This document shows, piece after piece, positions 26,298-59,577 of a DNA stretch of 64,000 nt; the stretch's first letter is position 1; each line of letters opens with the position of its first letter. A model generated the notes under the pieces. The model saw only the letters and a list, made by a program, of their open reading frames with translations. It had not been told where the DNA came from and searched no databases. The stretch covers positions 1 to 64,000 of IMG/VR virus record IMGVR_UViG_3300032287_003113. One strand, given 5' to 3'. Both the position numbers and the translations under genes were made by a program.

Positions 26298-26300
26298 AAA

Positions 26301-27287: not shown

Positions 27288-27340
27288 GGGATTCTCCAAT
27301 AGGATTTTGTATTATATATTTATACTTGCGCCTAGGATTC

Positions 27341-27632: not shown

Positions 27633-28008
27633 CCCAGCCCTGTCCGGAAATTGCATGGAACCAGGGATAAAATGAGCTGGGGATATCAAACTGCCATGTA
27701 CCTTCCTGATCAATCCATGCTGTTGGTGGCTGTGCCAAATGTTGATATCGTGGTAATACTTCTGTGCCGTTTACCGTTAATAGTTTGATCTCCACTGCAC
27801 CGCCGTTTGCGTCTACCACTGTACATTTTAAGTTTATAGGGCTAAACAAATCTATACTATAGTTAGTGTCTAGGTCCGTTATCAAATGTCCATTGAGACG
27901 CATACGATAATGTATGTTGCCGTGGGCAACTATGACCAATCGTACTTGCAATTGATCCGAGGTTTTAATATCCAATACGTCGGAGAAAGTGTTTATATCT
28001 TGGTGCAT
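27625..28008 (-). CDS. Hypothetical protein
   Basis: 127 aa; ends FYPWFHAISGQGW; overlaps the radical SAM gene. Confidence 0.55.
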   Translation of the reverse strand: MHQDINTFSDVLDIKTSDQLQVRLVIVAHGNIHYRMRLNGHLITDLDTNYSIDLFSPINLKCTVVDANGGAVEIKLLTVNGTEVLPRYQHLAQPPTAWIDQEGTWQFDIPSSFYPWFHAISGQGWVA

Positions 28009-29260
28009 AATCTAGTATCGTGTTGTTCCTGATTGTTTCAAAACTTTTTAAGAAACTGACTAATTCTTTCAGTGATTCCTCTGCATCTGCAGGCGGGGTG
28101 TATGTTTTAACAAACTCCAGGTACTCAGTGGCCAACTGTGCAATAATCTCGTGACTTAAATCACTTCTGCGAGTATTCACTTGCGGAGTATACGATCCTA
28201 ATCGATCAACCACAGCCTGTAACTTTGCAACGGTTTCTTGTCTGATATCGTCTGGCATCAGTTCCATACGCAAACAACGTGGTTGGTGCAATATGTTACA
28301 GCTCTCGGCGATAATGTTGTGTTCGATCATGAACTCAAAAACTTGGTCCAGTTCGCTGATAGTAAACAAGTTAGGAGTGATACGTAGTTCTAGTTTTAAT
28401 CCGGGATTACGATCACGCAAGGCCACAAACTTGAGAATGTTTGCCAAGATCTGATCAGTAGGTCCTGGATAACGCACATAATCGTTTAATGACGTAACTG
28501 ACTCTATACTGATACCTAGATGAAACTCTTGGAATCTAGGTATCAATTGTTCTATACGTTCATCGTATATTGTGCCGTTGGTAGTTGTGCCAACTATTAG
28601 ATCTTGTCCATCCAAGTGCTCGCAAATGTCGTAGAAGGCTTGATTATATAATGTTTCTCCACCCAGGAAGTGTATGTAACGTATGTATGGAAACGATTTT
28701 AACTCTGCAACAAAGCGATTGACTGTTGCTGAATCTTCAGTCCAAGACTGATACGGCTTGGGTTCAGCAAATAATCGACTATCCAGCTTGTTTAATTTTT
28801 TATAGTCTGCAACAAGACGTGAGCTTGCTGTGGGGTCGCACATGATACAGGCACTATTACAAGTATTACCTAGGTCTATTTGTAAATCTGTTGGAAAATG
28901 TGGGCTGGCACCCGCATGACTGTTGCTGTATTCAAATACAGGCAAGTGTGGGCTAGAACGAAAGGTTAATGGAAACTCTGCAAGACCAATAGCACTTTTG
29001 TTTAGTTGTCTAACACGACCCGAAAGTTTTCCAAACTGATCTTGGTAGTAACAAGGCTCACACTCTTTGGGTTTGTTGCCGGCTAATAGTTGTTGACGCA
29101 GGTCTCTCATGGGCCCACTGTTGTAAAAATCCATCAGCGAAGTTGTGCGTATGTTGAAGTCGGTAGCACCGTTTTTGCTCCAGCGACACACATCATAACT
29201 ACCATCGTAAGTTAATCTAATGTGGAACCAGGGACTTGAACAGAATGTGTTTTTTAACAT
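27965..29260 (-). CDS. Radical SAM protein with N-terminal twitch-like domain
   Basis: FCSSPW...C...CEPC; CNSACIMC; LGGETL. Confidence 0.88.
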   Translation of the reverse strand: MLKNTFCSSPWFHIRLTYDGSYDVCRWSKNGATDFNIRTTSLMDFYNSGPMRDLRQQLLAGNKPKECEPCYYQDQFGKLSGRVRQLNKSAIGLAEFPLTFRSSPHLPVFEYSNSHAGASPHFPTDLQIDLGNTCNSACIMCDPTASSRLVADYKKLNKLDSRLFAEPKPYQSWTEDSATVNRFVAELKSFPYIRYIHFLGGETLYNQAFYDICEHLDGQDLIVGTTTNGTIYDERIEQLIPRFQEFHLGISIESVTSLNDYVRYPGPTDQILANILKFVALRDRNPGLKLELRITPNLFTISELDQVFEFMIEHNIIAESCNILHQPRCLRMELMPDDIRQETVAKLQAVVDRLGSYTPQVNTRRSDLSHEIIAQLATEYLEFVKTYTPPADAEESLKELVSFLKSFETIRNNTILDYAPRYKHFLRRIGY

Positions 29261-32062: not shown

Positions 32063-32064
32063 TT

Positions 32065-33008: not shown

Positions 33009-33011
33009 GAT

Positions 33012-44154: not shown

Positions 44155-44693
44155 TATAGTGTTTCTCCGCCCACTGTACGATTACATGCACACAGTTCGC
44201 CAGTTTGTAACGCATCTAATACACGCAATGTTTCTTCTGGTGAGCGACCAACATTCAAGTTGTTGACAGTAACGTGTTGGATAACGTTGTCTGGATCAAC
44301 AATGAATGTGGCGCGAAGTGCGGCACCTGCTGGCGCATAGAAGCAACCTAATTGTTCGATCAAGCTCAACTCACCACGCTGTGTGTCAGCAAACTGGGTG
44401 TGAGTAATTTTCTTCAAATCCGCATGTGCGTTTTGCCATGCTACCTTGCAGAACTCATTGTCTGTGCTACCTGTTAGCAGGACTGCATCACGATCTGCAA
44501 AGTCACCTGCTAGTTTATCGTATGCAACAATTTCTGTTGGGCATACGAATGTGAAGTCTTTTGGATAGTAAACAATTACTTTCCACTTGCCTTCAAATGA
44601 TTTTTCTGTAATATCAAAGAAAGCGTCTTCTGGTTGTCCTGGCTTAACGCCTGTGACTGTAAATGCTTCTAATTTATGTCCTACTGTTTTCAT
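44154..44693 (-). CDS. ahpC: Peroxiredoxin AhpC
   Basis: YPKDFTFVCPTE, RATFIVDP, VGRS, LCAC. Confidence 0.95.
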   Translation of the reverse strand: MKTVGHKLEAFTVTGVKPGQPEDAFFDITEKSFEGKWKVIVYYPKDFTFVCPTEIVAYDKLAGDFADRDAVLLTGSTDNEFCKVAWQNAHADLKKITHTQFADTQRGELSLIEQLGCFYAPAGAALRATFIVDPDNVIQHVTVNNLNVGRSPEETLRVLDALQTGELCACNRTVGGETL

Positions 44694-46678: not shown

Positions 46679-47437
46679 TTATCTACGCTCGATATCTTGT
46701 TCCACACAGGCTGTGCCGTACTGTATTTCCACCAGTTTGCAAGGCTCTTTAAATGGATTTGTTAGCTGGTGCCATTCGCCGACTCCCACCCTATAGGTAT
46801 CGTGTGTATGTAGATGTTTAGGTGGTAATGAATATCCATTTTCCATAGCAGAATTTACTACAGCTTGTCCACTGGTAACTAACCAATATTCTGCACGTAG
46901 CTGATGGCGTTGCATACTTAGGCTTTGCCCCGGCTCTACTGTGAGTTCCTTGACTTTGGTGCCTGCAACTTCGTGTAGCACACGATAATATCCCCAAGGA
47001 CGCTGGGTTTTAGGTGCTTTCCACTCCTCAAGGATCCAACTACTGCTGTTGGCTTTGTTTTCGCCACCAACACCAAATGCAAATTCAATGTTGGTATCTT
47101 GCACATCCATCTCAGGGATATTATCTTTTGTTCTATCGCCACCATTGGCAAAAATCAAGGTTGCTGCAGGATAGTGTGCTCTGACCTGTTGGATAAAATG
47201 TCGAGCTGATCCATCTTCATCATCAAAGGTGTAAACTTCATCTATCATGGCAAGATTGTTGACAACGCACAAGCGTTCGTTCCAAGGCATGAATGCACGA
47301 CCTTTCTTGCGTTCCAACCATTCGTCGCTGTTTAGGCCAACAATAAGCATATCGCCTAGAGATCGGGCTGCTTTGAAATAAGCGATATGTCCAGAGTGTA
47401 CAGGATCAAACCCGCCGGTTGCCATTACTATTTTCAT
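46679..47437 (-). CDS. Cytidylyltransferase-like domain fused to a mannose-6-phosphate isomerase-type cupin
   Basis: TGGFDPVHSGH, GLNSD, ANGGDR; RPWG.Y, SLSMQRH..RAEYW, EIQYG...EQDIER. Confidence 0.88.
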   Translation of the reverse strand: MKIVMATGGFDPVHSGHIAYFKAARSLGDMLIVGLNSDEWLERKKGRAFMPWNERLCVVNNLAMIDEVYTFDDEDGSARHFIQQVRAHYPAATLIFANGGDRTKDNIPEMDVQDTNIEFAFGVGGENKANSSSWILEEWKAPKTQRPWGYYRVLHEVAGTKVKELTVEPGQSLSMQRHQLRAEYWLVTSGQAVVNSAMENGYSLPPKHLHTHDTYRVGVGEWHQLTNPFKEPCKLVEIQYGTACVEQDIERR

Positions 47438-48192
47438 CAGTCTGTGATCTTGTAGTAGTCTTTGTCTAGCCAGGTCACAACTAAATCTTCCAGTCTAGCA
47501 TAGCCGTGCTGGCTTACGCTGTTGATTAAGCTGTCGTTGATGAGATTGCGTTCAGCCAAATCGTACCAGGTGGCCTGTTGTGTCAAGGGCTCGTGGCCGC
47601 TGGCATATACTGCTGCATACAACCAAGGCGTGCCACGTTTACGATAAAAATATGCATCTCTGCAATCAAATCCCGAGATGGCCAACATGTAAATTAGATT
47701 TAAAATATTGTAATTGTAATATTGGTGACTATGTTGTTCAACCACTAAACTGCTGTTTTTCACATAGGTGCCCTGAGGTACTGTCAAGATCAGCATGCCA
47801 TTTTCTTGCAAGGTTTCTTTCCATATCCGCAAACACTTGAATGGATCTAGAGCATATTGAAAACTATCGTGTGCCCAGATTAGATCCACTTGTCTGGGTA
47901 CTACCCGTTCTTCGAAATTTCGCTCAATCGGTATCAAGTTTGGGTTACGGGCTAATATGTCAGGATCAATCTTGTTCAAATCTTGGTCTATGGCATATAC
48001 TGTGTAATTTCTAGGCTCGGCCGGTTCATCTCTGGTCATAAGGCTGGCCCACCATTCGGCATCAAGGCCGGCTCCACAACCCATGTCTGCTACACTGGTC
48101 AAACTATCAAGAAAACTGTCGTAGCCGTACAACAAGTTTAATACTTCTAAACTGTGTTCGTGACTTAGGTAGGGATTTTTAAATAGACCCAT
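47437..48192 (-). CDS. Class I SAM-dependent methyltransferase
   Basis: ADMGCGAG, DLIWAHD, L.ENGML. Confidence 0.8.
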   Translation of the reverse strand: MGLFKNPYLSHEHSLEVLNLLYGYDSFLDSLTSVADMGCGAGLDAEWWASLMTRDEPAEPRNYTVYAIDQDLNKIDPDILARNPNLIPIERNFEERVVPRQVDLIWAHDSFQYALDPFKCLRIWKETLQENGMLILTVPQGTYVKNSSLVVEQHSHQYYNYNILNLIYMLAISGFDCRDAYFYRKRGTPWLYAAVYASGHEPLTQQATWYDLAERNLINDSLINSVSQHGYARLEDLVVTWLDKDYYKITD

Positions 48193-48433
48193 GTTGTAGA
48201 ATTTCCATCACCAATTTTTCTTTTAATTGCGTGAGTCTAAATTCCAATTGATGGCATGCTTCGGCTACTTCGGCATCTGTGCCCCAACCACGCTGTGTAT
48301 TTAGATGGTATGCAAATTTTGCTACTGTGTCTTTTTCTAACTGTATATTTACAGCATCGTGCTTAGGTTTGGCTTGACAACAAAGTTCAAACTCTCGCAA
48401 CAACTCATCGGCACGTTGACGCCAATCCGTCAT
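48179..48433 (-). CDS. Hypothetical protein
   Basis: 84-aa overlapping ORF. Confidence 0.5.
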   Translation of the reverse strand: MTDWRQRADELLREFELCCQAKPKHDAVNIQLEKDTVAKFAYHLNTQRGWGTDAEVAEACHQLEFRLTQLKEKLVMEILQHGSI

Positions 48434-48885
48434 ACCACAATGTCTTCCATTCCGGCTGTGCGTAGTCTGACCACATGTCCCAACATGAAGTTCTTTGACT
48501 CAATGCCTTTCATGACGCCCAGCCAGCGATTGCGTAACAAGGCTACTTCATTGATAATAGTTTCCATGTCGACCACTTCATCCTCGGCTTCGGCATACTT
48601 TTCGGCATCTCTTGATGTTAATGCTCTAGCATAGGCTTCTAAATACTTTTTATAATGACGTTGGCGGATTTTACGTAATTGTATGTTAAGAAATTCTAGC
48701 ACAGCTTCAATCTCTTGCAGTTGATTAAATCTGTGTTCAGTCATGCCTGGCAAGTCGGACAACTCTTTTTCTACGCGACCACGTATTTTAATTTCTGTTT
48801 TGGCTGACGTCATCTCGCCTTCGTAGTAGTCGATGAATTCAGGAATAACGCTTAGGTCAGCTACAATTCGATTATAAAACATCAA
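48430..48885 (-). CDS. uvsY: UvsY-like recombination mediator
   Basis: Helical ~150 aa, YLE.Y...LT..D..KY, LGHVVRLRTAG; near uvsX and gp32. Confidence 0.7.
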   Translation of the reverse strand: MMFYNRIVADLSVIPEFIDYYEGEMTSAKTEIKIRGRVEKELSDLPGMTEHRFNQLQEIEAVLEFLNIQLRKIRQRHYKKYLEAYARALTSRDAEKYAEAEDEVVDMETIINEVALLRNRWLGVMKGIESKNFMLGHVVRLRTAGMEDIVV

Positions 48886-50119
48886 GGACTCCGGTTAGCC
48901 AAGGAAAAGTTTCACGCCAGTTGGTGTTGCGTCTACGATCAAGTTCGTCAAGATAAGTACGCAACTTGTTGATTTCGGTGGGATTTTTTTTGGTACTAGC
49001 AATTTGTTGTCTAACACCTTGCATATACTTACGTGCTTCCTGTTGTTGCCAAGTGTCTGCAGGCATAACTTCTAGCACCTGTGCAAAGTACGGATCTAGC
49101 AGTTCGGAATCAAAGATGTCTGGGTTCATGTAAGTGGGTGTGTTTGCGGTTATCAAATGATGCCCTATTTCTCTATGTGGTCTAAATGTGTTTATGTAAT
49201 TGATCAATGCTGGCATGGTAGGCACAGCCAATGCAGTGACCACTTGGTTTATGTTCAAAGTTATCCAACGTTGATTGACCAAATATTCAAAATTCTTTTT
49301 CCATTTTTCTAAATCCAAGCCCGATCTAATATACTCTTGTTCTGGACCCCAACAATCTATACTGGCAGTCACTTCAAAACGTTTGATCTTGCGTTCAGCA
49401 ACCAAATGTTTGATACGTTCTACATGCTCTTGCAATCGTTTATTATCGATCATCAAGTTACTTACTACATTAAATTCCAAATCTTTGTTACTATGATTAT
49501 ACAGGAAATCCAAACAAGTGTCAAATTGTGCTTGATAAAATGGTTCTCCGCCCAACACATGAAATCTGCGTACAGTCAAATAATTATCGTCTAGCCAGGC
49601 CCATAACTGTTCAGTCAGCAGGGCCTTGTCTGGATGCGGCCGATATTGGTTGTCAATTACAACACCGCCCAATTCAAATCTGCCGTGTTGATCATTTTCG
49701 TGTTTGATGCGACTGCTAAACCCATCGTGGCAATATATACATCGTAGATTACAGGTATTGTCAAAATATACTTCTACAATTCTAGGGGTGACCATGATGG
49801 CCTCAGGATCTGTGTCTAGTTCTGGCGGTGTTAGGTCTGGTATTGCCAGGTGTAGCATACGATCACTACTACCACCCGCACGTTCTATTTTTTCACAGTA
49901 ATCGCAACCACCTGAGGGCCATGCACCCAACAACATGGTTTGCCGATCTTGTAATTTTTTAGCAGTATTATGAAACTGATCAAACGATTCAGTTGATAGC
50001 GAACTTTTTTCTACTCTATGACAACTGTTGGTAGTTCCTTCGTACAAATAGATACTGCTCCAGGTCCATTTGAGCTGGCATGCAGTCGCTGTCTGTATTG
50101 GAAAATACTTGTGTTGCAT
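48872..50119 (-). CDS. Radical SAM protein (N-terminal twitch-like domain)
   Basis: CQLKW, SCH, CDYC; CNLRCIYC; LGGEPF. Confidence 0.88.
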   Translation of the reverse strand: MQHKYFPIQTATACQLKWTWSSIYLYEGTTNSCHRVEKSSLSTESFDQFHNTAKKLQDRQTMLLGAWPSGGCDYCEKIERAGGSSDRMLHLAIPDLTPPELDTDPEAIMVTPRIVEVYFDNTCNLRCIYCHDGFSSRIKHENDQHGRFELGGVVIDNQYRPHPDKALLTEQLWAWLDDNYLTVRRFHVLGGEPFYQAQFDTCLDFLYNHSNKDLEFNVVSNLMIDNKRLQEHVERIKHLVAERKIKRFEVTASIDCWGPEQEYIRSGLDLEKWKKNFEYLVNQRWITLNINQVVTALAVPTMPALINYINTFRPHREIGHHLITANTPTYMNPDIFDSELLDPYFAQVLEVMPADTWQQQEARKYMQGVRQQIASTKKNPTEINKLRTYLDELDRRRNTNWRETFPWLTGVLDVL

Positions 50120-50352
50120 TACCAGTTGGAATCTTCGCCTTCGTCATCATCTTGTTCGTCATCGGCGGTGTATTCTTTGAGAGCTTTTTTCAAGGTGCTG
50201 TCTGTTGTACCAAACTCCTTGAGTTCTTGATCTCCTAGCATATCTACCATGACACTCATTAGGTTATCGGCACACTCTTGACGGTCCTTTGCAGGAACAT
50301 ACTGTTTCATAATGGTATATAGTTCGCTTAAAACTTCTGTATCGATGGTCAT
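50119..50352 (-). CDS. Hypothetical acidic protein
   Basis: 77 aa with acidic tail. Confidence 0.55.
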   Translation of the reverse strand: MTIDTEVLSELYTIMKQYVPAKDRQECADNLMSVMVDMLGDQELKEFGTTDSTLKKALKEYTADDEQDDDEGEDSNW

Positions 50353-51485
50353 ACTTTTTCCTCTTTGTTAATCCACGTTGTAAAATTTTCTGGAAATACG
50401 TCTAACAAAAGTGATCTGCGATGAGCAAATTCTGTTAGATAATGCTTTAACTTGGTTTTTTGTTCCATTGTTGATTCTACTGCTAAAGTTTCTTTGATTT
50501 CTTGGTCATGATATTTATATTCAATTTGACATAACTGTGTCTTGGACTCAGGATCTAACACACTGGCACTTAGATATGCAGGATCGTTGCAGGGATTTAA
50601 CAAATCTTTGTCAGTTGAATATTCCCGTTGAAAATCATCGAATCCATGCACAGTTAAATTACTCAACACACTACAAAATCTATAGTCAAACTGTGCGGCT
50701 ATCAAATCCAAGTTACGTCTAAACTGATCCCAGGTATTACCATGCCTGTTAAATTCGTATAATGCACCTGTGTTTTCTGCACTGACAGTAAATGTAGTGC
50801 TTTTAGGTAACTGTGACAATATCTGTGTTAATCGCTTGGTATTAACTCCTAGGCCTGTAAAAATATCAACGGATCCTGTTAGTCCTGTTACCAACTCTGT
50901 TAGTCCATTGTATAAAAATGGCTCGCCACCGGTAATTTCTATTTGCTTGACTGTTTTAAATCTTTTTATTTCTGACAAAATAGTTTGGTAACTATCGCTG
51001 GCTTTTATAGCAGGTTGTCCTAGTTGTAACACAATTCTATCGTTGGCTGTGATTTGATATCTTGGCTCATCAAAATATGCACCGTGATCTTTAACATCAC
51101 GTAACCAAGCAGTACTGTACTGTTTACAGCAATAACTACAGGTTAGATTGCAATCGCTACCAACATTGATGTGTAACACTTGAGGACCAGCATAGATATC
51201 TGTGTGTGTTCTTTCTCCAGAATTCATCAGAGTACGTCGGCTGGGCAATCCACGACGTTCAGCTGACCAACAAGTATCTTCGCAACTTGCCACAGGCTCG
51301 TTGTTTAACATTGCTTGTCGTTCTTGTATTAGTACGGGCGTGTTAAACAACTGTCCTGGGTTATTTCTAAGCCAGGACAAGTCAATCTTGGTAGCTGTAG
51401 CAGCACAGCACGAATTCATAGTTCTTCGTTCAGGCTCTACAGTTAACCACCAAAATTTTTGCGAGCAATAATTACTCTGCGACAT
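50349..51485 (-). CDS. Radical SAM protein (N-terminal twitch-like domain)
   Basis: YCSQKF, SCC, CEDTC; CNLTCSYC; TGGEPF. Confidence 0.88.
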   Translation of the reverse strand: MSQSNYCSQKFWWLTVEPERRTMNSCCAATATKIDLSWLRNNPGQLFNTPVLIQERQAMLNNEPVASCEDTCWSAERRGLPSRRTLMNSGERTHTDIYAGPQVLHINVGSDCNLTCSYCCKQYSTAWLRDVKDHGAYFDEPRYQITANDRIVLQLGQPAIKASDSYQTILSEIKRFKTVKQIEITGGEPFLYNGLTELVTGLTGSVDIFTGLGVNTKRLTQILSQLPKSTTFTVSAENTGALYEFNRHGNTWDQFRRNLDLIAAQFDYRFCSVLSNLTVHGFDDFQREYSTDKDLLNPCNDPAYLSASVLDPESKTQLCQIEYKYHDQEIKETLAVESTMEQKTKLKHYLTEFAHRRSLLLDVFPENFTTWINKEEKV

Positions 51486-52593
51486 CAACCTCTTTTTTAG
51501 ACTTCTTTGGCTTGTCTTCAACCACTGCGTCTAATTCAGCTTCTAGTTCTTCAATGTCCACTGACTTCTGATGTGGATTGGCAACAAAATCTACCATGGC
51601 CTTGTCCAAGCATGAATCTTCGTTGCGTTCCCATGCCTTGCGAAACTTCTTGATAATTTCACCTGTAGCCAGTGTATACACCAGGCTGTTGCCTTCTTTC
51701 TTCAGCAAGTCTTTGCCTTCAAATAGGTCAACCAAACCCGAGTAAGGATTCATACCTTCTTCGTACGGAATCTTGACCTGAACAGATTCAAATGGTTTGG
51801 CATAGCGTGTTTTCATGATCTTGCAAGCGGCACGGATGCCTTTTACTTCTGAAATCTTGTTGCCATCCTCATCTTCTTTGAGTTTTAACTTACGCATAGC
51901 TACAACAATAGAGCTTGCATAGATAAAACCTTGTCCTCCTGATATTTTGTCGTCCGGATCAAACATGTCCTGTGACGCATAAGTGTGTGCTGTTGTTACT
52001 AGGCCAATATTCAAGCTACCAAACATGTTTACGCAATTACGTACCAGGGCGGCCAGTGCCTTGGGCTTACGACCCATGTCACCTTTCATGTCCCCTGCTT
52101 CGAATTGATTTACATCCGTGGGGGTAAGTAGCATACCCAACGAATCTACTACAAATAGTACTTTGGGACGTTGATCTTCTGGTAGTGTTTTGTATTCTTT
52201 GACAAACTCCGAGATCATCTTGCCCACATCATCGATCATGGCCATGTTTAGTTTGAGTAACTTGTCCTCACTGGTATCTACATTTAATGCATGTAGCCAT
52301 TTCTCGTCGAGTGCGTTTTCGCTATCAACCAGGATCACATAAATGCCTTGCTTTTGTGCATTGGCTACCAAGTTGCCCGAACAAATAAAACTTTTACCTG
52401 CGCCAGACTCGCCAGCAAACACAGTAACTTTACCTAGTGGAACACCTTTGTTAAAGTCTCCTGAAATTAGATAGTTGAGAGCATAGTTATTTGTACTGAT
52501 CCAATCTGTGGGATCGGTAAAGCCAACGCTGATACCGTCAATACTTTTGGTAATGCTCTTGCGAAATTTTGATACGTCAAATGGTTTAGCCAT
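51472..52593 (-). CDS. uvsX: UvsX/RecA-like recombinase
   Basis: GESGAGKS, DSENA, VVDSLG, ISGGQG, KTRYAKPF. Confidence 0.92.
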   Translation of the reverse strand: MAKPFDVSKFRKSITKSIDGISVGFTDPTDWISTNNYALNYLISGDFNKGVPLGKVTVFAGESGAGKSFICSGNLVANAQKQGIYVILVDSENALDEKWLHALNVDTSEDKLLKLNMAMIDDVGKMISEFVKEYKTLPEDQRPKVLFVVDSLGMLLTPTDVNQFEAGDMKGDMGRKPKALAALVRNCVNMFGSLNIGLVTTAHTYASQDMFDPDDKISGGQGFIYASSIVVAMRKLKLKEDEDGNKISEVKGIRAACKIMKTRYAKPFESVQVKIPYEEGMNPYSGLVDLFEGKDLLKKEGNSLVYTLATGEIIKKFRKAWERNEDSCLDKAMVDFVANPHQKSVDIEELEAELDAVVEDKPKKSKKEVDVAE

Positions 52594-53740
52594 GATAGTT
52601 TTCCTTGATGTTATATAAATCTTTAAATATTTTACTGCTGTCTACTTTACGTCTTTGATCCAATGTATATAGCTCTGCCATTGAACCTAAGAAATCTTTT
52701 TCGAATGGTTGCTCAATGTAATGTAGCATGTTACGGTAACTATCTTCTAATAGATAGCCCGGGCTTTCATTGATCCTAGCTTCCAAAGTGCTCTTAACTG
52801 ATTGTAACACAGAGTCTGGCAAATGTCTAATGTTTAGGTATTCTGGCTCTAATAGTGCACCAATCACAAATGCATTATTATGGAATCCCTGTGCTTTTAG
52901 GAGATCCACACAACCAAATATGCTTTGGTAGTTTAATAGGAAGTGTAGCATATTAAACGTAATTTTATGATCAAGTGAGTTTATGTGTTTTAAATTGTCT
53001 TGGAAATCTTGCCAACGACCACCGTGTCTAACGTACTCAAACTCATCTTCCGTAGTTTCTACACTCACTGTCCAGTGTACATTACGAAACTCACATATAC
53101 GCTCAAATACTCGGGTATCTACTTTACTTAGATTTGTGTTGATACGTAAGTTTACATCAGGATCTAACAGGTCTAGCAACTCTAAGTTTTCCCGCATCAG
53201 CAGAGGCTCGCCGCCAGCTAGATAAACATGCTCAAGTTGATCGGCACGGTCAAATATATACTGTTTAAAATTGGCACGTTGTTCTTGTGTCGGTGTTTGT
53301 TGTTTGATATCCAATTCATCTGCCCAACGGCTGCTAAACTCTGGATTACAATATACACAAGCAAAGTTACACAAGTTGGTCCAACGTACATCAATGGTTT
53401 TTAAATCAAAGTTTCCAGCACGATATGTATCCAAGCTGACATTTTTTAATTCTCGTATGTAAAACTTACGATCGCTGATAATATCAAATCCTTTTTTACC
53501 ATGCTCTAAATCATAGCATGTGCGGCACGAAGGTACCGCAACATCTGATACAATTTTATTTTGTATCAGTACATTGGTGTTGCCATGTACTACTTGTTCT
53601 ATTGGAGTGTCTTTGATATTGCCAATAGTACCAGCACTACGAATACAATTTTTGACTGTACCATCAAATCCGTTGTACATGAGGCCAGTCCAAGGTATAG
53701 GACAAAAATATGGATTAGTTAATACGTCCTTGGGTGTCAT
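52586..53740 (-). CDS. Radical SAM protein (N-terminal twitch-like domain)
   Basis: FCPIPW, CRTC; CNFACVYC; AGGEPL. Confidence 0.88.
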   Translation of the reverse strand: MTPKDVLTNPYFCPIPWTGLMYNGFDGTVKNCIRSAGTIGNIKDTPIEQVVHGNTNVLIQNKIVSDVAVPSCRTCYDLEHGKKGFDIISDRKFYIRELKNVSLDTYRAGNFDLKTIDVRWTNLCNFACVYCNPEFSSRWADELDIKQQTPTQEQRANFKQYIFDRADQLEHVYLAGGEPLLMRENLELLDLLDPDVNLRINTNLSKVDTRVFERICEFRNVHWTVSVETTEDEFEYVRHGGRWQDFQDNLKHINSLDHKITFNMLHFLLNYQSIFGCVDLLKAQGFHNNAFVIGALLEPEYLNIRHLPDSVLQSVKSTLEARINESPGYLLEDSYRNMLHYIEQPFEKDFLGSMAELYTLDQRRKVDSSKIFKDLYNIKENYHG

Positions 53741-54228
53741 GTCAATGAGATGTCCGGTATAATAAATCCGTTAGCTTCTGCTGTAGAAAAAAGTTTAACT
53801 AGTGTACGTGCCCATTCTGCTGGATTGATTACTTTACCTGGACGCACCAAAGTTATATTTGGACCGGCGGCATTCATATAACGCAATTGATGTACTGCTT
53901 GTTCTAGTGCAACCTTTTGCAATCGATATTGATCCATGCCTTCTATAACACTAACTGGTTGCTGTGCCATCATTGTGCTAATAACAATAATATGCTTTTG
54001 CGTATTATTCCAGCGACGATACACTTCAAACAACAATTCAGTTTGTGCAAAACCTGCTTGTGCATTGTTAATAAACACATCGCACGGCTCAATCAAGCTG
54101 GCAATCTTGGGAGTGTTGCGTATGTTGTTACCTTCGCGAGTGCTCAAACCAACAATCTCGTTGCCATAGTATGCTTCGGCCAGAGCTTGACCAATGCCTG
54201 CTGTGTGTCCTGTGATTGCTATTTTCAT
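53737..54228 (-). CDS. Minimal short-chain dehydrogenase/reductase
   Basis: TGHTAGIG, FINNA, YRLQK. Confidence 0.75.
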   Translation of the reverse strand: MKIAITGHTAGIGQALAEAYYGNEIVGLSTREGNNIRNTPKIASLIEPCDVFINNAQAGFAQTELLFEVYRRWNNTQKHIIVISTMMAQQPVSVIEGMDQYRLQKVALEQAVHQLRYMNAAGPNITLVRPGKVINPAEWARTLVKLFSTAEANGFIIPDISLT

Positions 54229-55109
54229 TCGATACCCCGTAATTGTTTTTGTTGTTGTATATATGCTTGTACTTGTTCTTGATTCTTATTATTGACATCT
54301 AATTCTTTGGGCTCTTTTAAATAAGCATAGCCATGATCGATTCCGTGTTCCTCGGCAAACTTTTTTATATTGGGCAAATCGTGCAAGTTCAACACACTAA
54401 CTGTGGTCCACAAGTTTAGTTTCACAGGCATGGTTTTATATCGCATTAAGTTTTGATAAAATGTCGCCCACTTGATAGGCCAACGCACATATTCAAACAC
54501 TGAACCGATACCATCACAACTCGCTGTGACCGTGACTTCTATGCCACGGCCGGCAATCTCTGTTAGCTCTTCTAACACCACGTTACAATTGGTATTAAGT
54601 CTCAGTGTACGCAAGTTCGAAGGCAAGTTGGCCAATAGTCTTCGATAGTTTTTGCTATAACTGGGTTCGCCGCCGTTGATATCCAAATGCACAATACGAT
54701 CTTGTGGCAAATCCCAAAAACGATTACTGTTATCTATTATAGTAAAAGTGCCACTGGTCAACGCACCTATCCTGGTGCTACATTCAGGACTGCAAGTCAG
54801 ACAAGCGGCATTGCATACATTGTCTAATACTCCGCCTACTTGTAAATAATCCCTCTGCGTTTCTAGGGCATCCACAGCAATGGCGTGTATTCTTATACTG
54901 CTAGGCGACTCTTGCTCGACTTCTTGACAACGTCGACATTCTACCGGCCACTCACCTTGTTCAAACTGTTCACGTATTTTACGCAACCAGCGACTGTTAT
55001 TCATTTCTTCAAGGCTATCAAACTGTGCAGGATTGACCATGTGACCACAGCGGCTTACTGTGCCATTGGGGTTAAAGCGAACAAAGTGATCTAGTCTAGG
55101 ACATTGCAT
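54225..55109 (-). CDS. Radical SAM protein (N-terminal twitch-like domain)
   Basis: CPRL, RCGH, CRRC; CNAACLTC; NGGEPS. Confidence 0.85.
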   Translation of the reverse strand: MQCPRLDHFVRFNPNGTVSRCGHMVNPAQFDSLEEMNNSRWLRKIREQFEQGEWPVECRRCQEVEQESPSSIRIHAIAVDALETQRDYLQVGGVLDNVCNAACLTCSPECSTRIGALTSGTFTIIDNSNRFWDLPQDRIVHLDINGGEPSYSKNYRRLLANLPSNLRTLRLNTNCNVVLEELTEIAGRGIEVTVTASCDGIGSVFEYVRWPIKWATFYQNLMRYKTMPVKLNLWTTVSVLNLHDLPNIKKFAEEHGIDHGYAYLKEPKELDVNNKNQEQVQAYIQQQKQLRGIE

Positions 55110-55702
55110 ATTTGAATGCTCCGATCAATAACTTCATCGTACAAAGCATGATGATTGTCTTGAACGAATCTAACGATTTGTTTGAGTGGAACTGTTTGTC
55201 CCATAAAATCTTCGTAAAGTATTTTATCTAATTGTAGATAATATTTTAATTTTTGATTGGTGCCGAAATAGTCTATCAGCGTTCGATCTCGTGCCAGCAC
55301 ATTCCATGTGTGTTCTGTGGCCGTGTGTAATTCTTCTATGGGTCTAAAGTACATCCAAGCATCGGTAAACTTTTGCAGATTGACGATCCAATGGAACTGC
55401 AAACTAAAATGACTGTTTAAAAACAAATACTGGTCGATCATGGTCAGTGCAGTTGCACGATCAAGGTGTGGATTTTGTCTTAGGTATGTTTGCACTCCGC
55501 TGACATAGCGTTCAAAAGGTTCACGTAAAAATATTTCAACTGTACGCAACTCCCGCATTTCAAAGTAATTGAGTTTTCTAGGGTTGGCAGCAAGTAAACT
55601 ACTGCTACCATTTTTAAAAATAGGATAGACATAGCGATCGGTCCCTACTTCAAGGATCTCGCATTGGTCTGGAAAGAGTATGGGGTCTAGATAAGACAGC
55701 AT
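55091..55702 (-). CDS. Sulfotransferase-family-like protein
   Basis: IFKNGSSS (5'-PSB-like), REPFERYVS (3'-PB-like), HFSLQ. Confidence 0.55.
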   Translation of the reverse strand: MLSYLDPILFPDQCEILEVGTDRYVYPIFKNGSSSLLAANPRKLNYFEMRELRTVEIFLREPFERYVSGVQTYLRQNPHLDRATALTMIDQYLFLNSHFSLQFHWIVNLQKFTDAWMYFRPIEELHTATEHTWNVLARDRTLIDYFGTNQKLKYYLQLDKILYEDFMGQTVPLKQIVRFVQDNHHALYDEVIDRSIQICNVLD

Positions 55703-55708
55703 AGGAAA

Positions 55709-55731
55709 TGTGGGGGACCGTCTCCCCCACT
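55709..55731 (-). terminator. GC-rich hairpin after gp32
   Basis: GTGGGGGA-GACGG-TCCCCCAC followed by ATTT. Confidence 0.6.
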
Positions 55732-55744
55732 GACACAAGCAATA

Positions 55745-56719
55745 TTACTGTTTCTGACGGTTACGAATCATTGCCAAAATGTCTTCAGCACGTTGGCTGG
55801 ATGGTTTGGCTTCTGCAGCCGGAGTTGCTATCGGTGCAGTTGGAGCAGGTACATCATCTTCTTCCGCTGGTTCTGCCGCCACAGCTGGTGCTGGTGCACT
55901 TTCTGCGGCTGGTGCAACGTTAGGAACATCCAAGCCATATGGCTTGTAGTAAGCACCCCAACGATCTGGATCGTATGGTTGGCCATCTACTGATGCTTCA
56001 AACATTTCTTTGAGAACCTTGAGCTCTACTTCGCTGGGTTTCTTAGGCAAGAAGTCTGACAAGTTGAACAGGCCATGCTCATCAATTGCGGCTTGTTCTT
56101 CTGCTGTCAATGCTGACTCTTTGCGGCTCCACTTAGAAGTTGAGTAGTCTGCGTAGCCACCTTTGCTTGTTTTAACGATTTGGAAATCCAAACCACGTTG
56201 CAAGTCTGTTGGCAATTCTTCCATTTCTGGATCCATCAATGCAGCCTTGATGATGTTAAAAATCTGTGGGCTGATTGTAAAGCGACGGATTGGGTTGGCT
56301 GGAACCTTGTCGTCACTCAGTGCGTTTTCACGTACAAAGCCTTGGAACACATAAGATTTTTTCTTCCAGTACTTGCGACCCATTTCCTCTAGGCTAGGAT
56401 CTTTGAACCACGGACGAACTTCTGCCAAGATTGGGCAAGCTTCGCCGTACATTTCCATACATGGAACTTGTACAACCACAGGCTTACTATCTGCTTGACC
56501 TTTGACACCAGCAAATGGTAGTCGGATCATTGCACGTTCAGCCCAAAAGAAGCTGTTCTTGGTGTTGCCGTCTGGGAGGAATCTAATGCGTGTTGTGGAA
56601 CCTTCTGCGATGTTCCAGTGTGGATAGATAGCGTTGTCGCCACCTGATTGTCTGTTACCGCCTTTGTTGCCTTCTGATGCTTGGAGCTTTGCTCTGATTT
56701 CTGCTAATGTTGTAGCCAT
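55745..56719 (-). CDS. Single-stranded DNA-binding protein (T4 gp32-like)
   Basis: IRFLPDG, C...G.ACP, YWKK, G.DF.I.K...GY.DY..S.W. Confidence 0.88.
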   Translation of the reverse strand: MATTLAEIRAKLQASEGNKGGNRQSGGDNAIYPHWNIAEGSTTRIRFLPDGNTKNSFFWAERAMIRLPFAGVKGQADSKPVVVQVPCMEMYGEACPILAEVRPWFKDPSLEEMGRKYWKKKSYVFQGFVRENALSDDKVPANPIRRFTISPQIFNIIKAALMDPEMEELPTDLQRGLDFQIVKTSKGGYADYSTSKWSRKESALTAEEQAAIDEHGLFNLSDFLPKKPSEVELKVLKEMFEASVDGQPYDPDRWGAYYKPYGLDVPNVAPAAESAPAPAVAAEPAEEDDVPAPTAPIATPAAEAKPSSQRAEDILAMIRNRQKQ

Positions 56720-56820: not shown

Positions 56821-57795
56821 TTAAGACTTTTTTACAGTTTGGATATATTTGTTGTAGAGCTCGCAATTTTTGGATGCCAATTGATACAATGCGTCCATAT
56901 GTTGTTGCCTACTAGGACTAGTATACAACACTTGTAGGCTATGCGTCAACCTTTTTATTCGATCATATGGATGTTGGGCTTGATCATATGATTCATCGAT
57001 AATGCTATCAAATGTTTGGAATCCCATGTTGCGTAATCTAGCCAAACTGCCTTCGCCGCTGACCAATACAAATGGTTTTCCGGTTGCCAAACAGTTGGCA
57101 GTCTTTTCAGTAAACCAAAAATCACTGATGCTGTCTGTTTCGCTTATGATTTCGATTTGGTATCGATTCCATACGTTGTTGTAGTTGCGACAAGCATCAT
57201 ACCAATCAATCATGCCCATGAAATGGGTACTGTTTAAATCTCGATCAAAAGTTTTTTGTTCGAGCCAGGCCAATTCTTTGGTGTACTGATTGTTAAAGTG
57301 TTTTAATGAGTCTTGTATAAAAGAAACTTTGGGTTGAAATGTTATGTAAGTATCATCGGGAAATGCTTGATCTAATTCATATGCCAAGCGAAATCTATTT
57401 AAATTGTATCGGCCAAGCAAACTGCCCACAAACTTTGCGTTGCTAATATTGCGGTCAAATTCCTTAGGCAAGTATTGATTGACACTGACAAAGATGCCCA
57501 AAGACAAACAATCAATTTTAAAATTGCTATCAGGATCAGGATCGTGTGTTTCTATTGTTATTTTATTGTGTGGTATACCAACCTTGTTGCAGAGAAATTC
57601 AATAAACTGACCAAATCCGCTAAAATCAAAATTTTCCCCATCCCATAATCTAATTAATACTTGTTGTCCAGTATACTGTTGCCCAAGTATGTCTAATAGT
57701 ATGTCTTTTCTGGTGATAGAATAATCTTTATGTACAAAAAATTGTCCAAGTATTAAAATGTCTGTATCGGTTACGGTAACTGCTTGTTCTATCAT
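56821..57795 (-). CDS. Hypothetical protein, TEKT-motif family
   Basis: IEIISET, FTEKTANCL..GKPF, GFQTF..IIDESYD. Confidence 0.6.
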   Translation of the reverse strand: MIEQAVTVTDTDILILGQFFVHKDYSITRKDILLDILGQQYTGQQVLIRLWDGENFDFSGFGQFIEFLCNKVGIPHNKITIETHDPDPDSNFKIDCLSLGIFVSVNQYLPKEFDRNISNAKFVGSLLGRYNLNRFRLAYELDQAFPDDTYITFQPKVSFIQDSLKHFNNQYTKELAWLEQKTFDRDLNSTHFMGMIDWYDACRNYNNVWNRYQIEIISETDSISDFWFTEKTANCLATGKPFVLVSGEGSLARLRNMGFQTFDSIIDESYDQAQHPYDRIKRLTHSLQVLYTSPSRQQHMDALYQLASKNCELYNKYIQTVKKS

Positions 57796-58556
57796 ATTTG
57801 TTTTAGCAAGTAGTTGGCCCAAAGTTCATGACCATACTCTGTGGGATGACGGCTATCTTCTTTGTAAGTGTATTTGCAGGCGTCTAAAATATCAACTCTA
57901 GCCAATGCTTGATCAATCACAGCTGGAGTATCCGGATAGGTGTAATTGTAGTTTAGTTGTTTGATGTGCTCGCTGACCACTATGTGTGTGTCGTTTTGTA
58001 TGCGATTGTTGGTTATAACTTCTAGCCAATTGCGATCACACACGTTTAATTTTGTTGGGCGACTATCAGTAAAGTTGTGTGCTACAACAAATTTTATACT
58101 GGGATATTTTTTTTCCAGTTGCTCAATGTCACTGTAAGTACGATCTAACATTGCAATCAGATTGTTGTGTAATGTATCTAGTTCAGGTTTTAGCCAATTT
58201 ATTTCTTCGTGGCGTCCCGATTCTGTTAGAGTGATAATGCACACGGTATTTTTGCCATGCACATGTCTTGACAACAGTTGTGCCAACCAGGCGCACATCA
58301 TATGGTTACTAATGCCTGGCAAGGCCAAATTGATCCAATCTGCTCCAATTTCTTCTGCTATTAACCCGCCATACACATGGCATAATCTATGTTCTGGGTC
58401 ATCGCGGCCATCACGTACTCGTGTTTGGCCTAGGCTATCTCCGTATGTCCAACTATCGCCTACAGTTATAAGTAGTTGTTCGCTGTCAACACAACGATAA
58501 TGATACGGATTATTGACCTGGGACCATTTGGGAATATCAACTATAGTATTAAACAT
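57792..58556 (-). CDS. SGNH/GDSL hydrolase-like protein
   Basis: GDSWTYG, NLALPG.SN, DSRHP..YGH. Confidence 0.7.
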   Translation of the reverse strand: MFNTIVDIPKWSQVNNPYHYRCVDSEQLLITVGDSWTYGDSLGQTRVRDGRDDPEHRLCHVYGGLIAEEIGADWINLALPGISNHMMCAWLAQLLSRHVHGKNTVCIITLTESGRHEEINWLKPELDTLHNNLIAMLDRTYSDIEQLEKKYPSIKFVVAHNFTDSRPTKLNVCDRNWLEVITNNRIQNDTHIVVSEHIKQLNYNYTYPDTPAVIDQALARVDILDACKYTYKEDSRHPTEYGHELWANYLLKQI

Positions 58557-59577
58557 AGCTGGTTAAATCTAATTCATACAATCTTTTCCACTGATCGTAT
58601 GCATACTTCCTAAAATGATTTTTGTTGTATTGACAACGACCAAAATATTTTTGTTGATATTCTTGTGCAGGATTACCAACAGCATTTATAGCGGCAATAG
58701 CCACTTGAGCATATTGATACTGTCTACGTGGGTCGCCGGTGTTTTCATCAATAGTGGTATAGTTAAATACATCATCAAACACATCAAATCCCTGTTGCTT
58801 AAGGTGTTTACGTAAAGGTGCTTGTCCGTAGACAAAAAATGGTCGCATGCCAAGTATGGGCTTGAATGTTTTTTCACTGGCAAAAAAATTCTTGGGATAA
58901 TAGTTGTTGAATTCTGTTTCAGTAACCAAACATAACAAACTATTTTGCCAAATATTCATATCGCCTAGGCTAAAAATATCGTTGCGTATTTTATGACTGA
59001 CCCAAGTTTCGTCAGCGCCAAGTTGGCCGTATTCATCGTGTATGCCCTGTACATCGTCAAATGTTTCGTTTAATGTTATGGCACGATCACCCGGCAAGCC
59101 AAGACTTACAAATCCTTGTTGTTGTAGGCCAGCGGCCAACAATTCATTTACCAACGACACTCTGTGCGGATGTGGTTTGCGATTCAAGCATATAAACTTA
59201 CGAGCTGTGTCCATAACAGGAACATGATATTCTTCGTAGTTTTGAAAATACAAATCACACACCATGGCCCAGAAGTCCAAACGATATTGGTCAGCATTGC
59301 CCAATATAAGATACGGGCGACCCGATTGTTCAATGGTTCTAAATATTCTAGGCACAGCAGGATCTACAAAATTATGACAGATAATAAAATCAGGGTCAGC
59401 GGCTTCAATTTTTTTGGCTATGTCATTTTCGTGTAGCCAGGTAGGATTGATAAACATCACACGTTCGCAACCAAGCTGTTGTTGTGCTTTGTTTTCTAGT
59501 ATGTTACGTATTAGTTGTTCAACTCGGCCGGCTTTCCATGCATAGGGAAACCCGTTGGTATCTTTGATAATTTGCAT
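58549..59577 (-). CDS. Hypothetical protein, TEKT-motif family
   Basis: FICLNRKPHPHR, LVTET, FASEKTFKPI...RPF. Confidence 0.6.
   Translation of the reverse strand: MQIIKDTNGFPYAWKAGRVEQLIRNILENKAQQQLGCERVMFINPTWLHENDIAKKIEAADPDFIICHNFVDPAVPRIFRTIEQSGRPYLILGNADQYRLDFWAMVCDLYFQNYEEYHVPVMDTARKFICLNRKPHPHRVSLVNELLAAGLQQQGFVSLGLPGDRAITLNETFDDVQGIHDEYGQLGADETWVSHKIRNDIFSLGDMNIWQNSLLCLVTETEFNNYYPKNFFASEKTFKPILGMRPFFVYGQAPLRKHLKQQGFDVFDDVFNYTTIDENTGDPRRQYQYAQVAIAAINAVGNPAQEYQQKYFGRCQYNKNHFRKYAYDQWKRLYELDLTSYV

What the first reader, a model, noticed from the sequence alone, without database searches (positions are those of the whole stretch)
48430..56719. Four radical SAM genes, an SDR and a sulfotransferase-like gene interleaved with gp32, uvsX and uvsY
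Seen: order gp32, sulfotransferase-like, rSAM, SDR, rSAM, uvsX, rSAM, hypothetical, rSAM, uvsY, with overlapping starts and stops. These rSAMs, and the one at 27965, carry the Cys-rich twitch-like domain before the CxxxCxxC core, the reverse of usual SPASM proteins; 17919 has the usual order. Inference: an expanded phage-specific rSAM family modifying DNA, nucleotide sugars or virion glycans, or spreading into core operons.
Basis: partly seen in the sequence, partly recalled or inferred. Interest (0 to 1): 0.68.

Follow-up and report, generated by a model that had tools for sequence, protein, structure and literature searches.

The report
Permuted radical SAM genes in phage recombination operon
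A freshwater jumbo phage carries at least twelve copies of an uncharacterised radical SAM enzyme family whose iron-sulfur "twitch" domain sits at the front; four of them, with a sulfotransferase-like and a small reductase gene, lie as optional cargo between its DNA recombination genes and most likely tailor sugars rather than DNA.

Summary
On the minus strand, 48430-56719 reads gp32, sulfotransferase-like, rSAM (294 aa), mini-SDR, rSAM (384), UvsX, rSAM (378-390), a 77-aa protein, rSAM (415), UvsY, with overlapping starts and stops.

All four rSAMs, and the one at 27965, match NCBIfam NF033640 (N_Twi_rSAM). They have four invariant N-terminal Cys before the CxxxCxxC core. The gene at 17919 has the usual order.

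The record is about half a genome, and it holds 12 such genes at 20-45% identity. A relative holds 11.

Across 82 related loci the backbone is gp32-UvsX-u77-UvsY. Nine of 70 gp32-UvsX junctions hold the four-gene cassette (sulfotransferase-like, rSAM, SDR, rSAM). Single rSAM genes are variable inserts between UvsX and UvsY.

The family is not phage-specific. The 12 copies belong to old subfamilies shared with Bdellovibrionota and other bacteria.

Gene neighbours and fusions point to glycan or nucleotide-sugar tailoring: GT1, GT2 and GT7, a carbamoyltransferase, a DegT aminotransferase, epimerases and methyltransferases. Nothing points to DNA modification. No family member has a known reaction or a solved structure, so the chemistry is inferred, not shown.

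The parts
55745..56719 (-). gp32-type single-strand DNA binding protein (backbone gene)
   Evidence: phrog_1192 E 3.8e-65; present in nearly all of the 82 related loci
55710..55730 (-). G+C-rich hairpin just after the gp32 stop and before the cassette (terminator-like, weak T tail)
   Evidence: a consensus scan only
55091..55702 (-). sulfotransferase-like protein (203 aa from Met13 of the 215-aa ORF); first gene of the cassette
   Evidence: no HMM hit; invariant KNGSSS, RxPxxRxxSG and His98; AF2 pLDDT 86.9; top 16 VIA-align rows are sulfotransferases, Z 6.2-3.5; ESM features 0.95 to a PF03567 cluster
54225..55109 (-). short N-terminal-twitch radical SAM protein (294 aa, lacks the C-terminal helical part); cassette gene 2
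   Evidence: NF033640 E 7e-45, 153.8 bits, below the cut-off of 170; seven Cys conserved in 11 of 11 orthologues
53737..54228 (-). minimal SDR-like protein (163 aa); cassette gene 3
   Evidence: weak SDR hits, E 1e-4; TGxxxGIG, NNAQ and YxxxK motifs in the sequence; paralogue at 63197-63754 hits adh_short
52586..53740 (-). N-terminal-twitch radical SAM protein (384 aa); cassette gene 4
   Evidence: NF033640 228 bits; Pfam SPASM at residues 13-76 and Radical_SAM at 120-268; AF2 pLDDT 94.9
51472..52593 (-). UvsX recombinase (backbone gene)
   Evidence: phrog_97 E 1.4e-65, RecA Pfam; 61-69% identical to UvsX of Rak2/GAP32/Atu_ph07-like jumbo phages
50349..51485 (-). N-terminal-twitch radical SAM protein (378 aa from the called start; 390 aa from the TTG); variable insert
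   Evidence: NF033640 157.7 bits; same position in only 1 of 66 relatives
50119..50352 (-). 77-aa acidic protein, a backbone gene between UvsX and UvsY, not tied to the rSAMs
   Evidence: recognised (blastp E <= 1e-5) in 40 of 66 UvsX-UvsY junctions, 30 of them without any rSAM; 47 junctions leave only a ~216-270 nt gap that fits such a gene
48872..50119 (-). N-terminal-twitch radical SAM protein (415 aa); variable insert before UvsY
   Evidence: NF033640 242 bits; orthologues at this site in 6 of 66 junctions; 2561 metagenomic homologues
48430..48882 (-). UvsY recombination mediator (backbone gene)
   Evidence: phrog_231 E 5.9e-15
27965..29260 (-). fifth N-terminal-twitch rSAM in the window (431 aa)
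   Evidence: NF033640 231 bits
17919..18776 (-). conventional rSAM with C-terminal SPASM domain, beside GT17, an epimerase and a sugar C-methyltransferase
46679..48192 (-). backbone genes downstream of UvsY: a SAM methyltransferase (47437-48192) and a sugar-phosphate nucleotidyltransferase with a cupin domain (46679-47437)
   Evidence: conserved in relatives

Best explanation
The four genes belong to the N-terminal-twitch radical SAM family (NCBIfam NF033640). This is a circularly permuted form of the SPASM/twitch group. A four-Cys domain for an auxiliary [4Fe-4S] cluster comes before the CxxxCxxC/GGEP SAM-cleaving barrel.

The genes are not part of the recombination machinery. They are accessory cargo at two insertion hot spots, gp32|UvsX and UvsX|UvsY, in the conserved backbone of a clade of freshwater jumbo phages related to Rak2/GAP32-like phages, and they appear to be translationally coupled to the recombination genes.

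The unit at gp32|UvsX is a fixed four-gene cassette: sulfotransferase-like protein, short rSAM, mini-SDR, rSAM.

Most likely function (inferred): radical tailoring of sugars. The substrates would be nucleotide sugars or a glycan that the phage itself builds with its many glycosyltransferases, epimerases, aminotransferase, carbamoyltransferase and methyltransferases.

A plausible cassette mechanism (inferred):
1. The 5'-deoxyadenosyl radical abstracts a hydrogen from a sugar carbon.
2. The fully Cys-ligated auxiliary cluster takes the electron, as in BtrN, giving a keto-sugar.
3. The SDR reduces the ketone from the other face, so the net result is epimerisation.
4. The sulfotransferase-like protein decorates the product.

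The 12 paralogues are old, distinct subfamilies. Each probably handles a different step or substrate.
For: Shown:
- Family membership and motifs.
- Seven Cys conserved in all orthologues.
- Confident AF2 model with the order Cys, beta-hairpin, Cys, helix, CxxC ahead of the barrel.
- The BtrN twitch domain aligns, weakly, to the N-terminal part of the family profile.
- Variable-insert status in 82 relatives.
- The cassette is always complete: 9 of 9 junctions that hold any of its rSAM or SDR genes hold all four genes (one further locus, L029, has only a distant u215-like gene).

Context for sugars:
- Window and genome rich in NDP-sugar epimerases/dehydratases, a sugar C-methyltransferase, FkbM methyltransferases, split transketolase, GT8/9/17/25/34, DegT, a carbamoyltransferase and a nucleotidyltransferase.
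- A family member fused to GT2.
- A 22-kb contig with six N-twitch rSAMs (plus further rSAM-domain genes) interleaved with five GT2 genes.
- Among 149 neighbours in 29 bacterial loci, the most recurrent families besides further rSAM genes (4) are GT1 (5), carbamoyltransferase (4), DegT (3), GT2 (3), GT7 (3) and methyltransferases (3).
- The best structural core match is BlsE, a nucleoside-sugar decarboxylase (Z 12.6).

Exact-match contigs in an RNA library lie on rS390, u77, UvsX and the SDR.
Against: - No member of NF033640 has a known reaction or a solved structure.
- The structural core matches tie with RiPP maturases such as SkfB, anSME, CteB and SuiB (Z 11-12).
- Many neighbours are unknown proteins.
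- The neighbour counts have no formal background control.
- The bacterial sample was drawn with motifs from one subfamily.
- The SDR and sulfotransferase assignments rest on motifs and modest fold scores.
- The RNA-library contigs may be carried-over DNA.
- The glycan acceptor (virion, host surface or DNA) is unknown.
Confidence: 0.55

Rival explanations
1. The rSAMs are protein or peptide maturases. They would install crosslinks, epimerised residues or other marks on phage structural proteins, host proteins such as flagellin, or small peptides, as most SPASM/twitch enzymes do.
For: The closest solved cores include SkfB, anSME, CteB, SuiB and EpeE. One family member is fused to a subtilase-like domain and one to a GNAT domain. 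Flagellin genes lie beside the family in two bacterial loci.
Against: There is no RiPP recognition element; the N-terminus is the twitch domain itself. No precursor-like gene travels with the rSAMs: the 77-aa gene is a backbone gene present without any rSAM in 30 junctions. The recurrent partners are sugar enzymes.
Confidence: 0.2
2. The rSAMs modify phage DNA or nucleotide pools. Examples would be base hypermodification or sugar-decorated DNA, which would explain their place among gp32, UvsX and UvsY.
For: Position inside the recombination operon, with translational coupling. A dCMP deaminase lies beside the 27965 copy. There are weak viperin and QueE-like core hits. The record is only about 51% complete, so a hydroxymethylase could lie elsewhere.
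Against: The same junctions hold unrelated cargo or nothing in most relatives. A relative with 11 copies has none at this site. ThyA sits beside DHFR and scores 344 bits over its full length, which suggests ordinary dTMP synthesis. Bacterial homologues sit beside carbohydrate genes, not DNA-modification genes.
Confidence: 0.12
3. The copies are drifting or selfish cargo without a current function in this phage.
For: Patchy presence among close relatives. Two copies score below the family cut-off, and one is truncated.
Against: All frames are open. All seven Cys are conserved across orthologues at 35-83% identity. The truncated form is itself conserved in 11 loci. Orthologues of one copy stay 75-93% identical across more than 100 clusters. 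RNA-library contigs cover two of the cassette and insert genes.
Confidence: 0.05

Closest known systems
NCBIfam NF033640, N_Twi_rSAM (twitch domain-containing radical SAM protein)
   Same: Full-length matches over the curated cut-off for 10 of the 12 copies in the record. Same order: four-Cys twitch domain, then CxxxCxxC core, GGEP, and a C-terminal D..RR helix.
   Different: The family carries a name only; no reaction is assigned. Two copies here (rS390, rS294) fall below the cut-off, and rS294 lacks the C-terminal third.
BtrN, BlsE and other twitch-domain rSAMs acting on sugars (NeoN, AprD4 and DesII-type chemistry)
   Same: Partial TIM-barrel rSAM core. One auxiliary cluster site with four Cys in the pattern Cys, hairpin, Cys, helix, CxxC. 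The BtrN twitch aligns to the family's N-terminus (E 1e-3). BlsE is the best core match (Z 12.6, rmsd 3.8 A, 216 residues). The context is carbohydrate.
   Different: The auxiliary domain is N-terminal, not C-terminal. Sequence identity is 13-18%. Whole-chain TM is at most 0.43. Substrates are unknown.
SPASM/twitch RiPP maturases (SkfB, anSME, CteB, SuiB)
   Same: Core fold and auxiliary Fe-S domain type.
   Different: No RRE domain, no second auxiliary cluster motif, permuted order, and no precursor gene nearby.
Multi-rSAM T4-like environmental phages (marine EVG TARA_ERS488813_N000010 with 12 rSAM genes, PMC5332604) and cyanophage S-SCSM2R with adjacent DegT-like and rSAM genes (PMC12801897)
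   Same: T4-type phages that carry many rSAM genes, or an rSAM beside a sugar aminotransferase.
   Different: Those reports gave counts or generic labels only. They gave no family, permuted architecture, cassette or insertion sites. I did not test whether their rSAMs belong to NF033640.
Phage-encoded glycan gene clusters (LPS-like clusters of large cyanomyoviruses; virion glycosylation of mycobacteriophages)
   Same: A phage carrying many sugar-nucleotide and glycosyltransferase genes as accessory cargo. This comparison rests on established knowledge and was not tested here.
   Different: Here the set is dominated by a radical SAM family, and part of it is embedded in the recombination operon.

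Membership tests
NF033640 N_Twi_rSAM | HMM score over the curated cut-off (170 bits), full-length | tested here: met
   rS415 242.3 bits, rS384 228.4, the 27965 copy 231. rS390 (157.7) and rS294 (153.8) are below the cut-off, though at E 1e-45 or better. I therefore call these two divergent or truncated relatives.
NF033640 N_Twi_rSAM | Twitch-type auxiliary cluster motif N-terminal to the rSAM core | tested here: met
   Four invariant Cys before the core in 12 of 12 paralogues (3 invariant and 1 nearly invariant, at least 90%, in 108 family members). Pfam SPASM hit at residues 13-76 of rS384. The AF2 model shows a hairpin between Cys1 and Cys2.
Radical SAM superfamily | CxxxCxxC cluster motif and GGE SAM-binding motif | tested here: met
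   Invariant C123/C127/C130 and G190-G191-E192. PF04055 hits.
Radical SAM superfamily | Binds [4Fe-4S] clusters and cleaves SAM reductively | not testable with these tools
   Needs anaerobic protein chemistry.
PAPS-dependent sulfotransferases (Sulfotransfer_2-like) | 5'-phosphosulfate loop (PKxGxxS/T), 3'-phosphate motif (RxxxxRxxS) and a catalytic His | tested here: met
   K30-N-G-S-S-S, R60-x-P-x-x-R65-x-x-S68-G and H98 are invariant in 34 homologues.
PAPS-dependent sulfotransferases (Sulfotransfer_2-like) | Significant sequence or fold match to family members | tested here: inconclusive
   No Pfam, NCBIfam or PHROG hit. Foldseek is not significant. The top 16 VIA-align rows are all sulfotransferases, but Z is only 6.2-3.5. 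ESM features score 0.95 to a cluster in which 15% of members carry PF03567.
Classical SDR | TGxxxGxG, NNAG and YxxxK motifs on a Rossmann fold of about 250 aa | tested here: inconclusive
   The motifs are present in the sequence. The protein is only 163 aa, and HMM hits are far below the cut-offs (E 1e-4).
T4-type recombination module (gp32, UvsX, UvsY) | Profile matches to the three families, in one operon | tested here: met
   phrog_1192, phrog_97 and phrog_231. The order is conserved in 82 relatives.
RiPP maturase (rSAM/SPASM with RRE) | N-terminal RiPP recognition element and a co-located precursor peptide gene | tested here: not met
   The N-terminus is the twitch domain. The only small neighbouring gene is a backbone gene that is independent of the rSAMs.

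The most novel reading that the evidence does not exclude
The N-terminal-twitch rSAMs are a large, wholly uncharacterised class of radical carbohydrate-tailoring enzymes, for example epimerases, dehydrogenases or C-C bond formers. They would work as a multi-subfamily toolkit, exchanged between jumbo phages and predatory Bdellovibrionota, that builds highly decorated, possibly sulfated and carbamoylated glycans on virions or cell surfaces by radical chemistry not yet described for glycans.
Probability: 0.3. Interest if true: 0.78.

Novelty: new variant of a known kind. Interest (0 to 1): 0.6.

Why it matters
The family is very large: 8,516 clusters at 50% identity with E <= 1e-30. It has no characterised member and no solved structure, and it sits beside glycan enzymes in phages and bacteria.

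The four-gene cassette is a compact, testable unit of sulfotransferase-like protein, short rSAM, mini-SDR and rSAM. It is conserved in at least ten phages and could reveal the family's reaction.

For phage biology, the locus shows that the gp32-UvsX-UvsY module of a widespread freshwater jumbo-phage clade is a hot spot where oxygen-sensitive accessory enzymes are inserted and coupled to core gene expression.

Tried and rejected
- Megablast of the region against 50,697 phage records found nothing. By tblastn, only Ralstonia phage RsoM2USA, Vibrio phages K566/K567 and one marine fragment carry relatives.
A narrower alignment worked, but it biases the bacterial sample towards one subfamily.
- PDB sequence search with rS415 alone found nothing. 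The best profile hit, 8VPO, is TigE, an RRE-bearing cyclopropyl synthase and not an N-twitch protein.
- Foldseek for the sulfotransferase-like model gave nothing significant.
- The 77-aa gene as an rSAM substrate or partner is rejected: it is a backbone gene.
- Recent in-phage duplication is rejected: the copies are not a clade (this is a quick tree with several long branches, so only the starred groupings are relied on).
- Phage-encoded Fe-S assembly genes (IscA/ATC, IscU) were not found in this half genome.
- Literature searches for an N-terminal-twitch rSAM function found none.
Full report
**What is there.** The window is the first 64 kb of a 219,879-bp linear IMG/VR virus record that CheckV rates 51% complete. 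Identical proteins sit on 352-357 kb metagenome scaffolds, so the true genome is a jumbo phage.

From 56719 down to 48430, all genes lie on the minus strand:
- gp32 (324 aa; phrog_1192, E 4e-65)
- a 203/215-aa unknown protein
- an rSAM of 294 aa
- a 163-aa SDR-like protein
- an rSAM of 384 aa
- UvsX (373 aa; phrog_97, E 1e-65)
- an rSAM of 378/390 aa
- a 77-aa acidic protein
- an rSAM of 415 aa
- UvsY (phrog_231, E 6e-15)

Starts and stops overlap by 1-19 nt; the rS415 start overlaps the u77 stop as TAATG. A promoter-like site precedes gp32, and a G+C-rich hairpin follows it just before the cassette. These are consensus matches only.

UvsX is 61-69% identical to the recombinases of Rak2/GAP32/CBB/Atu_ph07-like jumbo phages.

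**The rSAM family.** All four rSAMs, and the one at 27965, match NCBIfam NF033640, 'N_Twi_rSAM, twitch domain-containing radical SAM protein'. rS415 (242 bits), rS384 (228) and the 27965 copy (231) pass the 170-bit cut-off. rS390 (158) and rS294 (154) fall just below it; rS294 lacks the C-terminal third.

The whole record holds 12 such genes. Five are in tandem at 158.7-165.2 kb; the others are at 116.8 and 207.2 kb. They are 20-45% identical to one another.

All 12 keep four N-terminal Cys, the CxxxCxxC motif, GGE(P), and several Arg and Ser positions. The same residues hold across 108 family members. All seven Cys are kept in every orthologue from related phages.

An AlphaFold2 model of rS384 is confident (pLDDT 94.9, pTM 0.91). 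It shows Cys, beta-hairpin, Cys, helices, CxxC ahead of the barrel, which is the twitch topology placed at the N-terminus.

No solved structure covers the architecture. Foldseek TM is at most 0.43. VIA-align finds only the core: BlsE Z 12.6, then SkfB, anSME, CteB, PFL-AE and MoaA at Z 11-12. The BtrN twitch domain aligns weakly to the N-terminal part of the family profile.

The gene at 17919 has the usual core-then-SPASM order. It corresponds to a catalogued but functionally unassigned family, for which I found no paper describing a reaction.

**The other two cassette genes.**

The 203-aa protein has no HMM hit. Evidence that it is sulfotransferase-like:
- In 34 homologues it keeps K-N-G-S-S-S, R-x-P-x-x-R-x-x-S-G and a His invariant, which match the PAPS-binding loops and catalytic base of sulfotransferases.
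- Its model (pLDDT 86.9) finds sulfotransferases in the top 16 rows of an all-against-PDB structural search. Carbohydrate sulfotransferases come first, at Z 6.2-3.5.
- Language-model features place it beside a viral cluster that partly carries PF03567.
- Foldseek alone was not significant.

I accept 'sulfotransferase-like' as likely but not proven.

The 163-aa protein has classical SDR motifs but is short, and it scores far below the family cut-offs.

**Backbone versus cargo.** I fetched 80 IMG/VR loci around UvsX orthologues at 78-95% identity, plus two metagenome loci, and mapped the window's genes onto them.

The shared order is TerL, a 489-aa protein, gp32, UvsX, the 77-aa gene, UvsY, an 84-aa gene, a methyltransferase, and a sugar-phosphate nucleotidyltransferase/cupin.

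At the gp32-UvsX junction, seen in 70 loci:
- 23 loci have the two genes fewer than 100 nt apart.
- 9 hold the complete four-gene cassette.
- 1 holds only a distant homologue of the sulfotransferase-like gene.
- The rest hold other small or unknown genes.

At the UvsX-UvsY junction, seen in 66 loci:
- 47 have only about 230 nt, enough for the 77-aa gene.
- 6 add an rS415 orthologue.
- 3 add an rS390-like gene after the small gene.
- 1 adds it before the small gene.

Only this window has both rSAM inserts.

The 77-aa gene is therefore part of the backbone, not an rSAM partner or precursor. The rSAMs are optional inserts at hot spots.

A 261-kb relative with no rSAM at these junctions still has 11 family members elsewhere in its genome.

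Contigs from two other freshwater studies reproduce the rS415-u77-rS390-UvsX arrangement almost exactly. Some contigs skip rS415 or rS390, as expected from co-occurring relatives.

One metatranscriptome library holds exact-match contigs on rS390, the 77-aa gene, UvsX and the SDR. This is suggestive of transcription, but DNA carry-over is not excluded.

**Distribution.**
- A profile of the 12 paralogues finds 8,516 clusters (50% identity) at E <= 1e-30 among 1.84 billion representatives. These include proteins with two or three tandem copies.
- The nearest ESM Atlas structure clusters are 90-100% viral.
- Among deposited phage genomes, only four records have relatives.
- In species-representative bacterial genomes, a motif-guided scan found 37 loci. 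About two thirds are from Bdellovibrionota MAGs, some with up to seven copies in 17 kb. One lies on a 936-kb contig flanked by gcvT and purT. Others are from Gammaproteobacteria (a 2.6-Mb contig) and Leptospiraceae. A few 'MAG' contigs are evidently mis-binned phages.
- In a maximum-likelihood tree of 90 sequences, the 12 copies need 12 label changes. Well-supported pairs join individual copies to copies from relatives, a marine virus or Bdellovibrionota. This is a quick search with several long branches.

The expansion is thus real but old. It is a set of distinct subfamilies that travel together, not a recent burst and not a phage-only family. Nishimura et al. had already noted a marine T4-like genome with 12 rSAM genes (PMC5332604).

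**Function.** The evidence is contextual. Within this genome:
- NDP-sugar epimerases/dehydratases (five paralogues), a two-domain sugar C-methyltransferase, FkbM-type methyltransferases, split transketolase, and GT8/9/17/25/34-type glycosyltransferases (some of these seen in a close relative's syntenic region).
- A DegT aminotransferase and a NodU/CmcH-type carbamoyltransferase next to the five-rSAM operon.
- SGNH/DUF6071 proteins and a heptose-type nucleotidyltransferase.

Outside this phage:
- One family member is fused to GT2 and one to a GNAT domain.
- One 22-kb contig interleaves six N-twitch rSAMs (plus further rSAM-domain genes) with five GT2 genes.
- The carbamoyltransferase and DegT genes recur beside the family in bacterial loci. 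One is 47% identical, in a gammaproteobacterial chromosome.
- Among 149 genes within 3.3 kb of family members in 29 bacterial loci, the most recurrent Pfam families besides further rSAM genes (4) are GT1 (5), carbamoyltransferase (4), DegT (3), GT2 (3), GT7 (3) and methyltransferases (3). Flagellin appears twice.

I therefore favour sugar or glycan tailoring. The step-by-step scheme is an inference by analogy with BtrN-type twitch enzymes, whose auxiliary cluster is also fully Cys-ligated. In that scheme the rSAM oxidises a sugar carbon, the SDR reduces it from the other face, and the sulfotransferase-like protein decorates the product.

The DNA-modification reading rests on position alone. 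Thymidylate synthase next to DHFR, plus a dCMP deaminase, suggest ordinary pyrimidines. Half of the genome is unseen, however.

The peptide-maturase reading is weakened by the lack of an RRE and of any co-travelling precursor.

**Verdict.** It is not phage-specific, and there is no sign of DNA modification.

The family is catalogued, and multi-rSAM T4-like phages have been noted before. New here are the family assignment, the conserved four-gene cassette, the hot-spot insertion pattern, the shared subfamily toolkit with Bdellovibrionota, and the glycan context.

Noticed in passing
window 56821-57822, 58549-59577, 30304-31383 (also G000 102778, 154932, 155914, 171217): A seven-copy family of unknown ~330-390 aa proteins sits next to rSAM genes and gp32. 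It has no Pfam or NCBIfam hit. The only lead is a weak language-model similarity (0.80) to GT10 fucosyltransferase clusters.
   Followed up: partly
window 57792-58556 (also G000 101904, 103739, 167131, 167750): A five-copy SGNH/GDSL-like, DUF6071-like family, also found beside the family in bacterial loci. These are possibly sugar O-acyl esterases or transferases.
   Followed up: partly
window 43648-44693; locus L002 19035-19612: Peroxiredoxin (AhpC) and a CMD/AhpD-like gene lie just downstream of the module. A relative carrying an identical rS384 protein and the same gene order has rubrerythrin plus rubredoxin at that place. This swappable oxidative-stress pair could protect the oxygen-labile Fe-S enzymes.
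   Followed up: no
window ~26300-27300, ~32050-33010, ~40450-41400 (by syntenic relative L010): The phage carries TRAP (DctP) and TTT (TctC) solute-binding protein genes and a GATase-like gene. TctC-type genes are typical of Betaproteobacteria, a possible host hint.
   Followed up: no
window 10885-12876: Phage-encoded GroEL (539 aa) and GroES.
   Followed up: no
window 19694-24708, plus strand: A sugar pathway block read from a syntenic relative: two FkbM-type methyltransferases, two NDP-sugar epimerases/dehydratases, split transketolase halves and another methyltransferase. This suggests a branched or methylated deoxysugar.
   Followed up: no
window 49524-49496, minus strand: A perfect 12/12 sigma-70 consensus (TTGACA-17-TATAAT) lies inside the rS415 coding region, about 600 nt upstream of UvsY. 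It is a consensus match only.
   Followed up: no
window 48739-50131 and 50150-51676: Contigs in DNA and RNA libraries join across these points with only 20-nt sides. They most likely come from co-occurring relatives that lack rS415 or rS390.
   Followed up: partly
G000 158667-165217 (locus L004 8668-15218): Five N-twitch rSAM genes lie in tandem with overlapping ends. They are preceded by a conventional rSAM and unknown genes, and followed by SGNH genes and a carbamoyltransferase. This looks like the main operon of the system.
   Followed up: partly
loci L098, L096, L120 (GTDB 'MAGs' of Fischerella, Neomarinimicrobiota, Pelagibacterales): L098 is syntenic with this phage's 143-181 kb region, and L096 and L120 share several of this phage's accessory genes. 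They look like phage contigs binned into bacterial MAGs.
   Followed up: partly
window 62657-63184: An HNH endonuclease gene on the opposite strand lies next to the large terminase gene.
   Followed up: no
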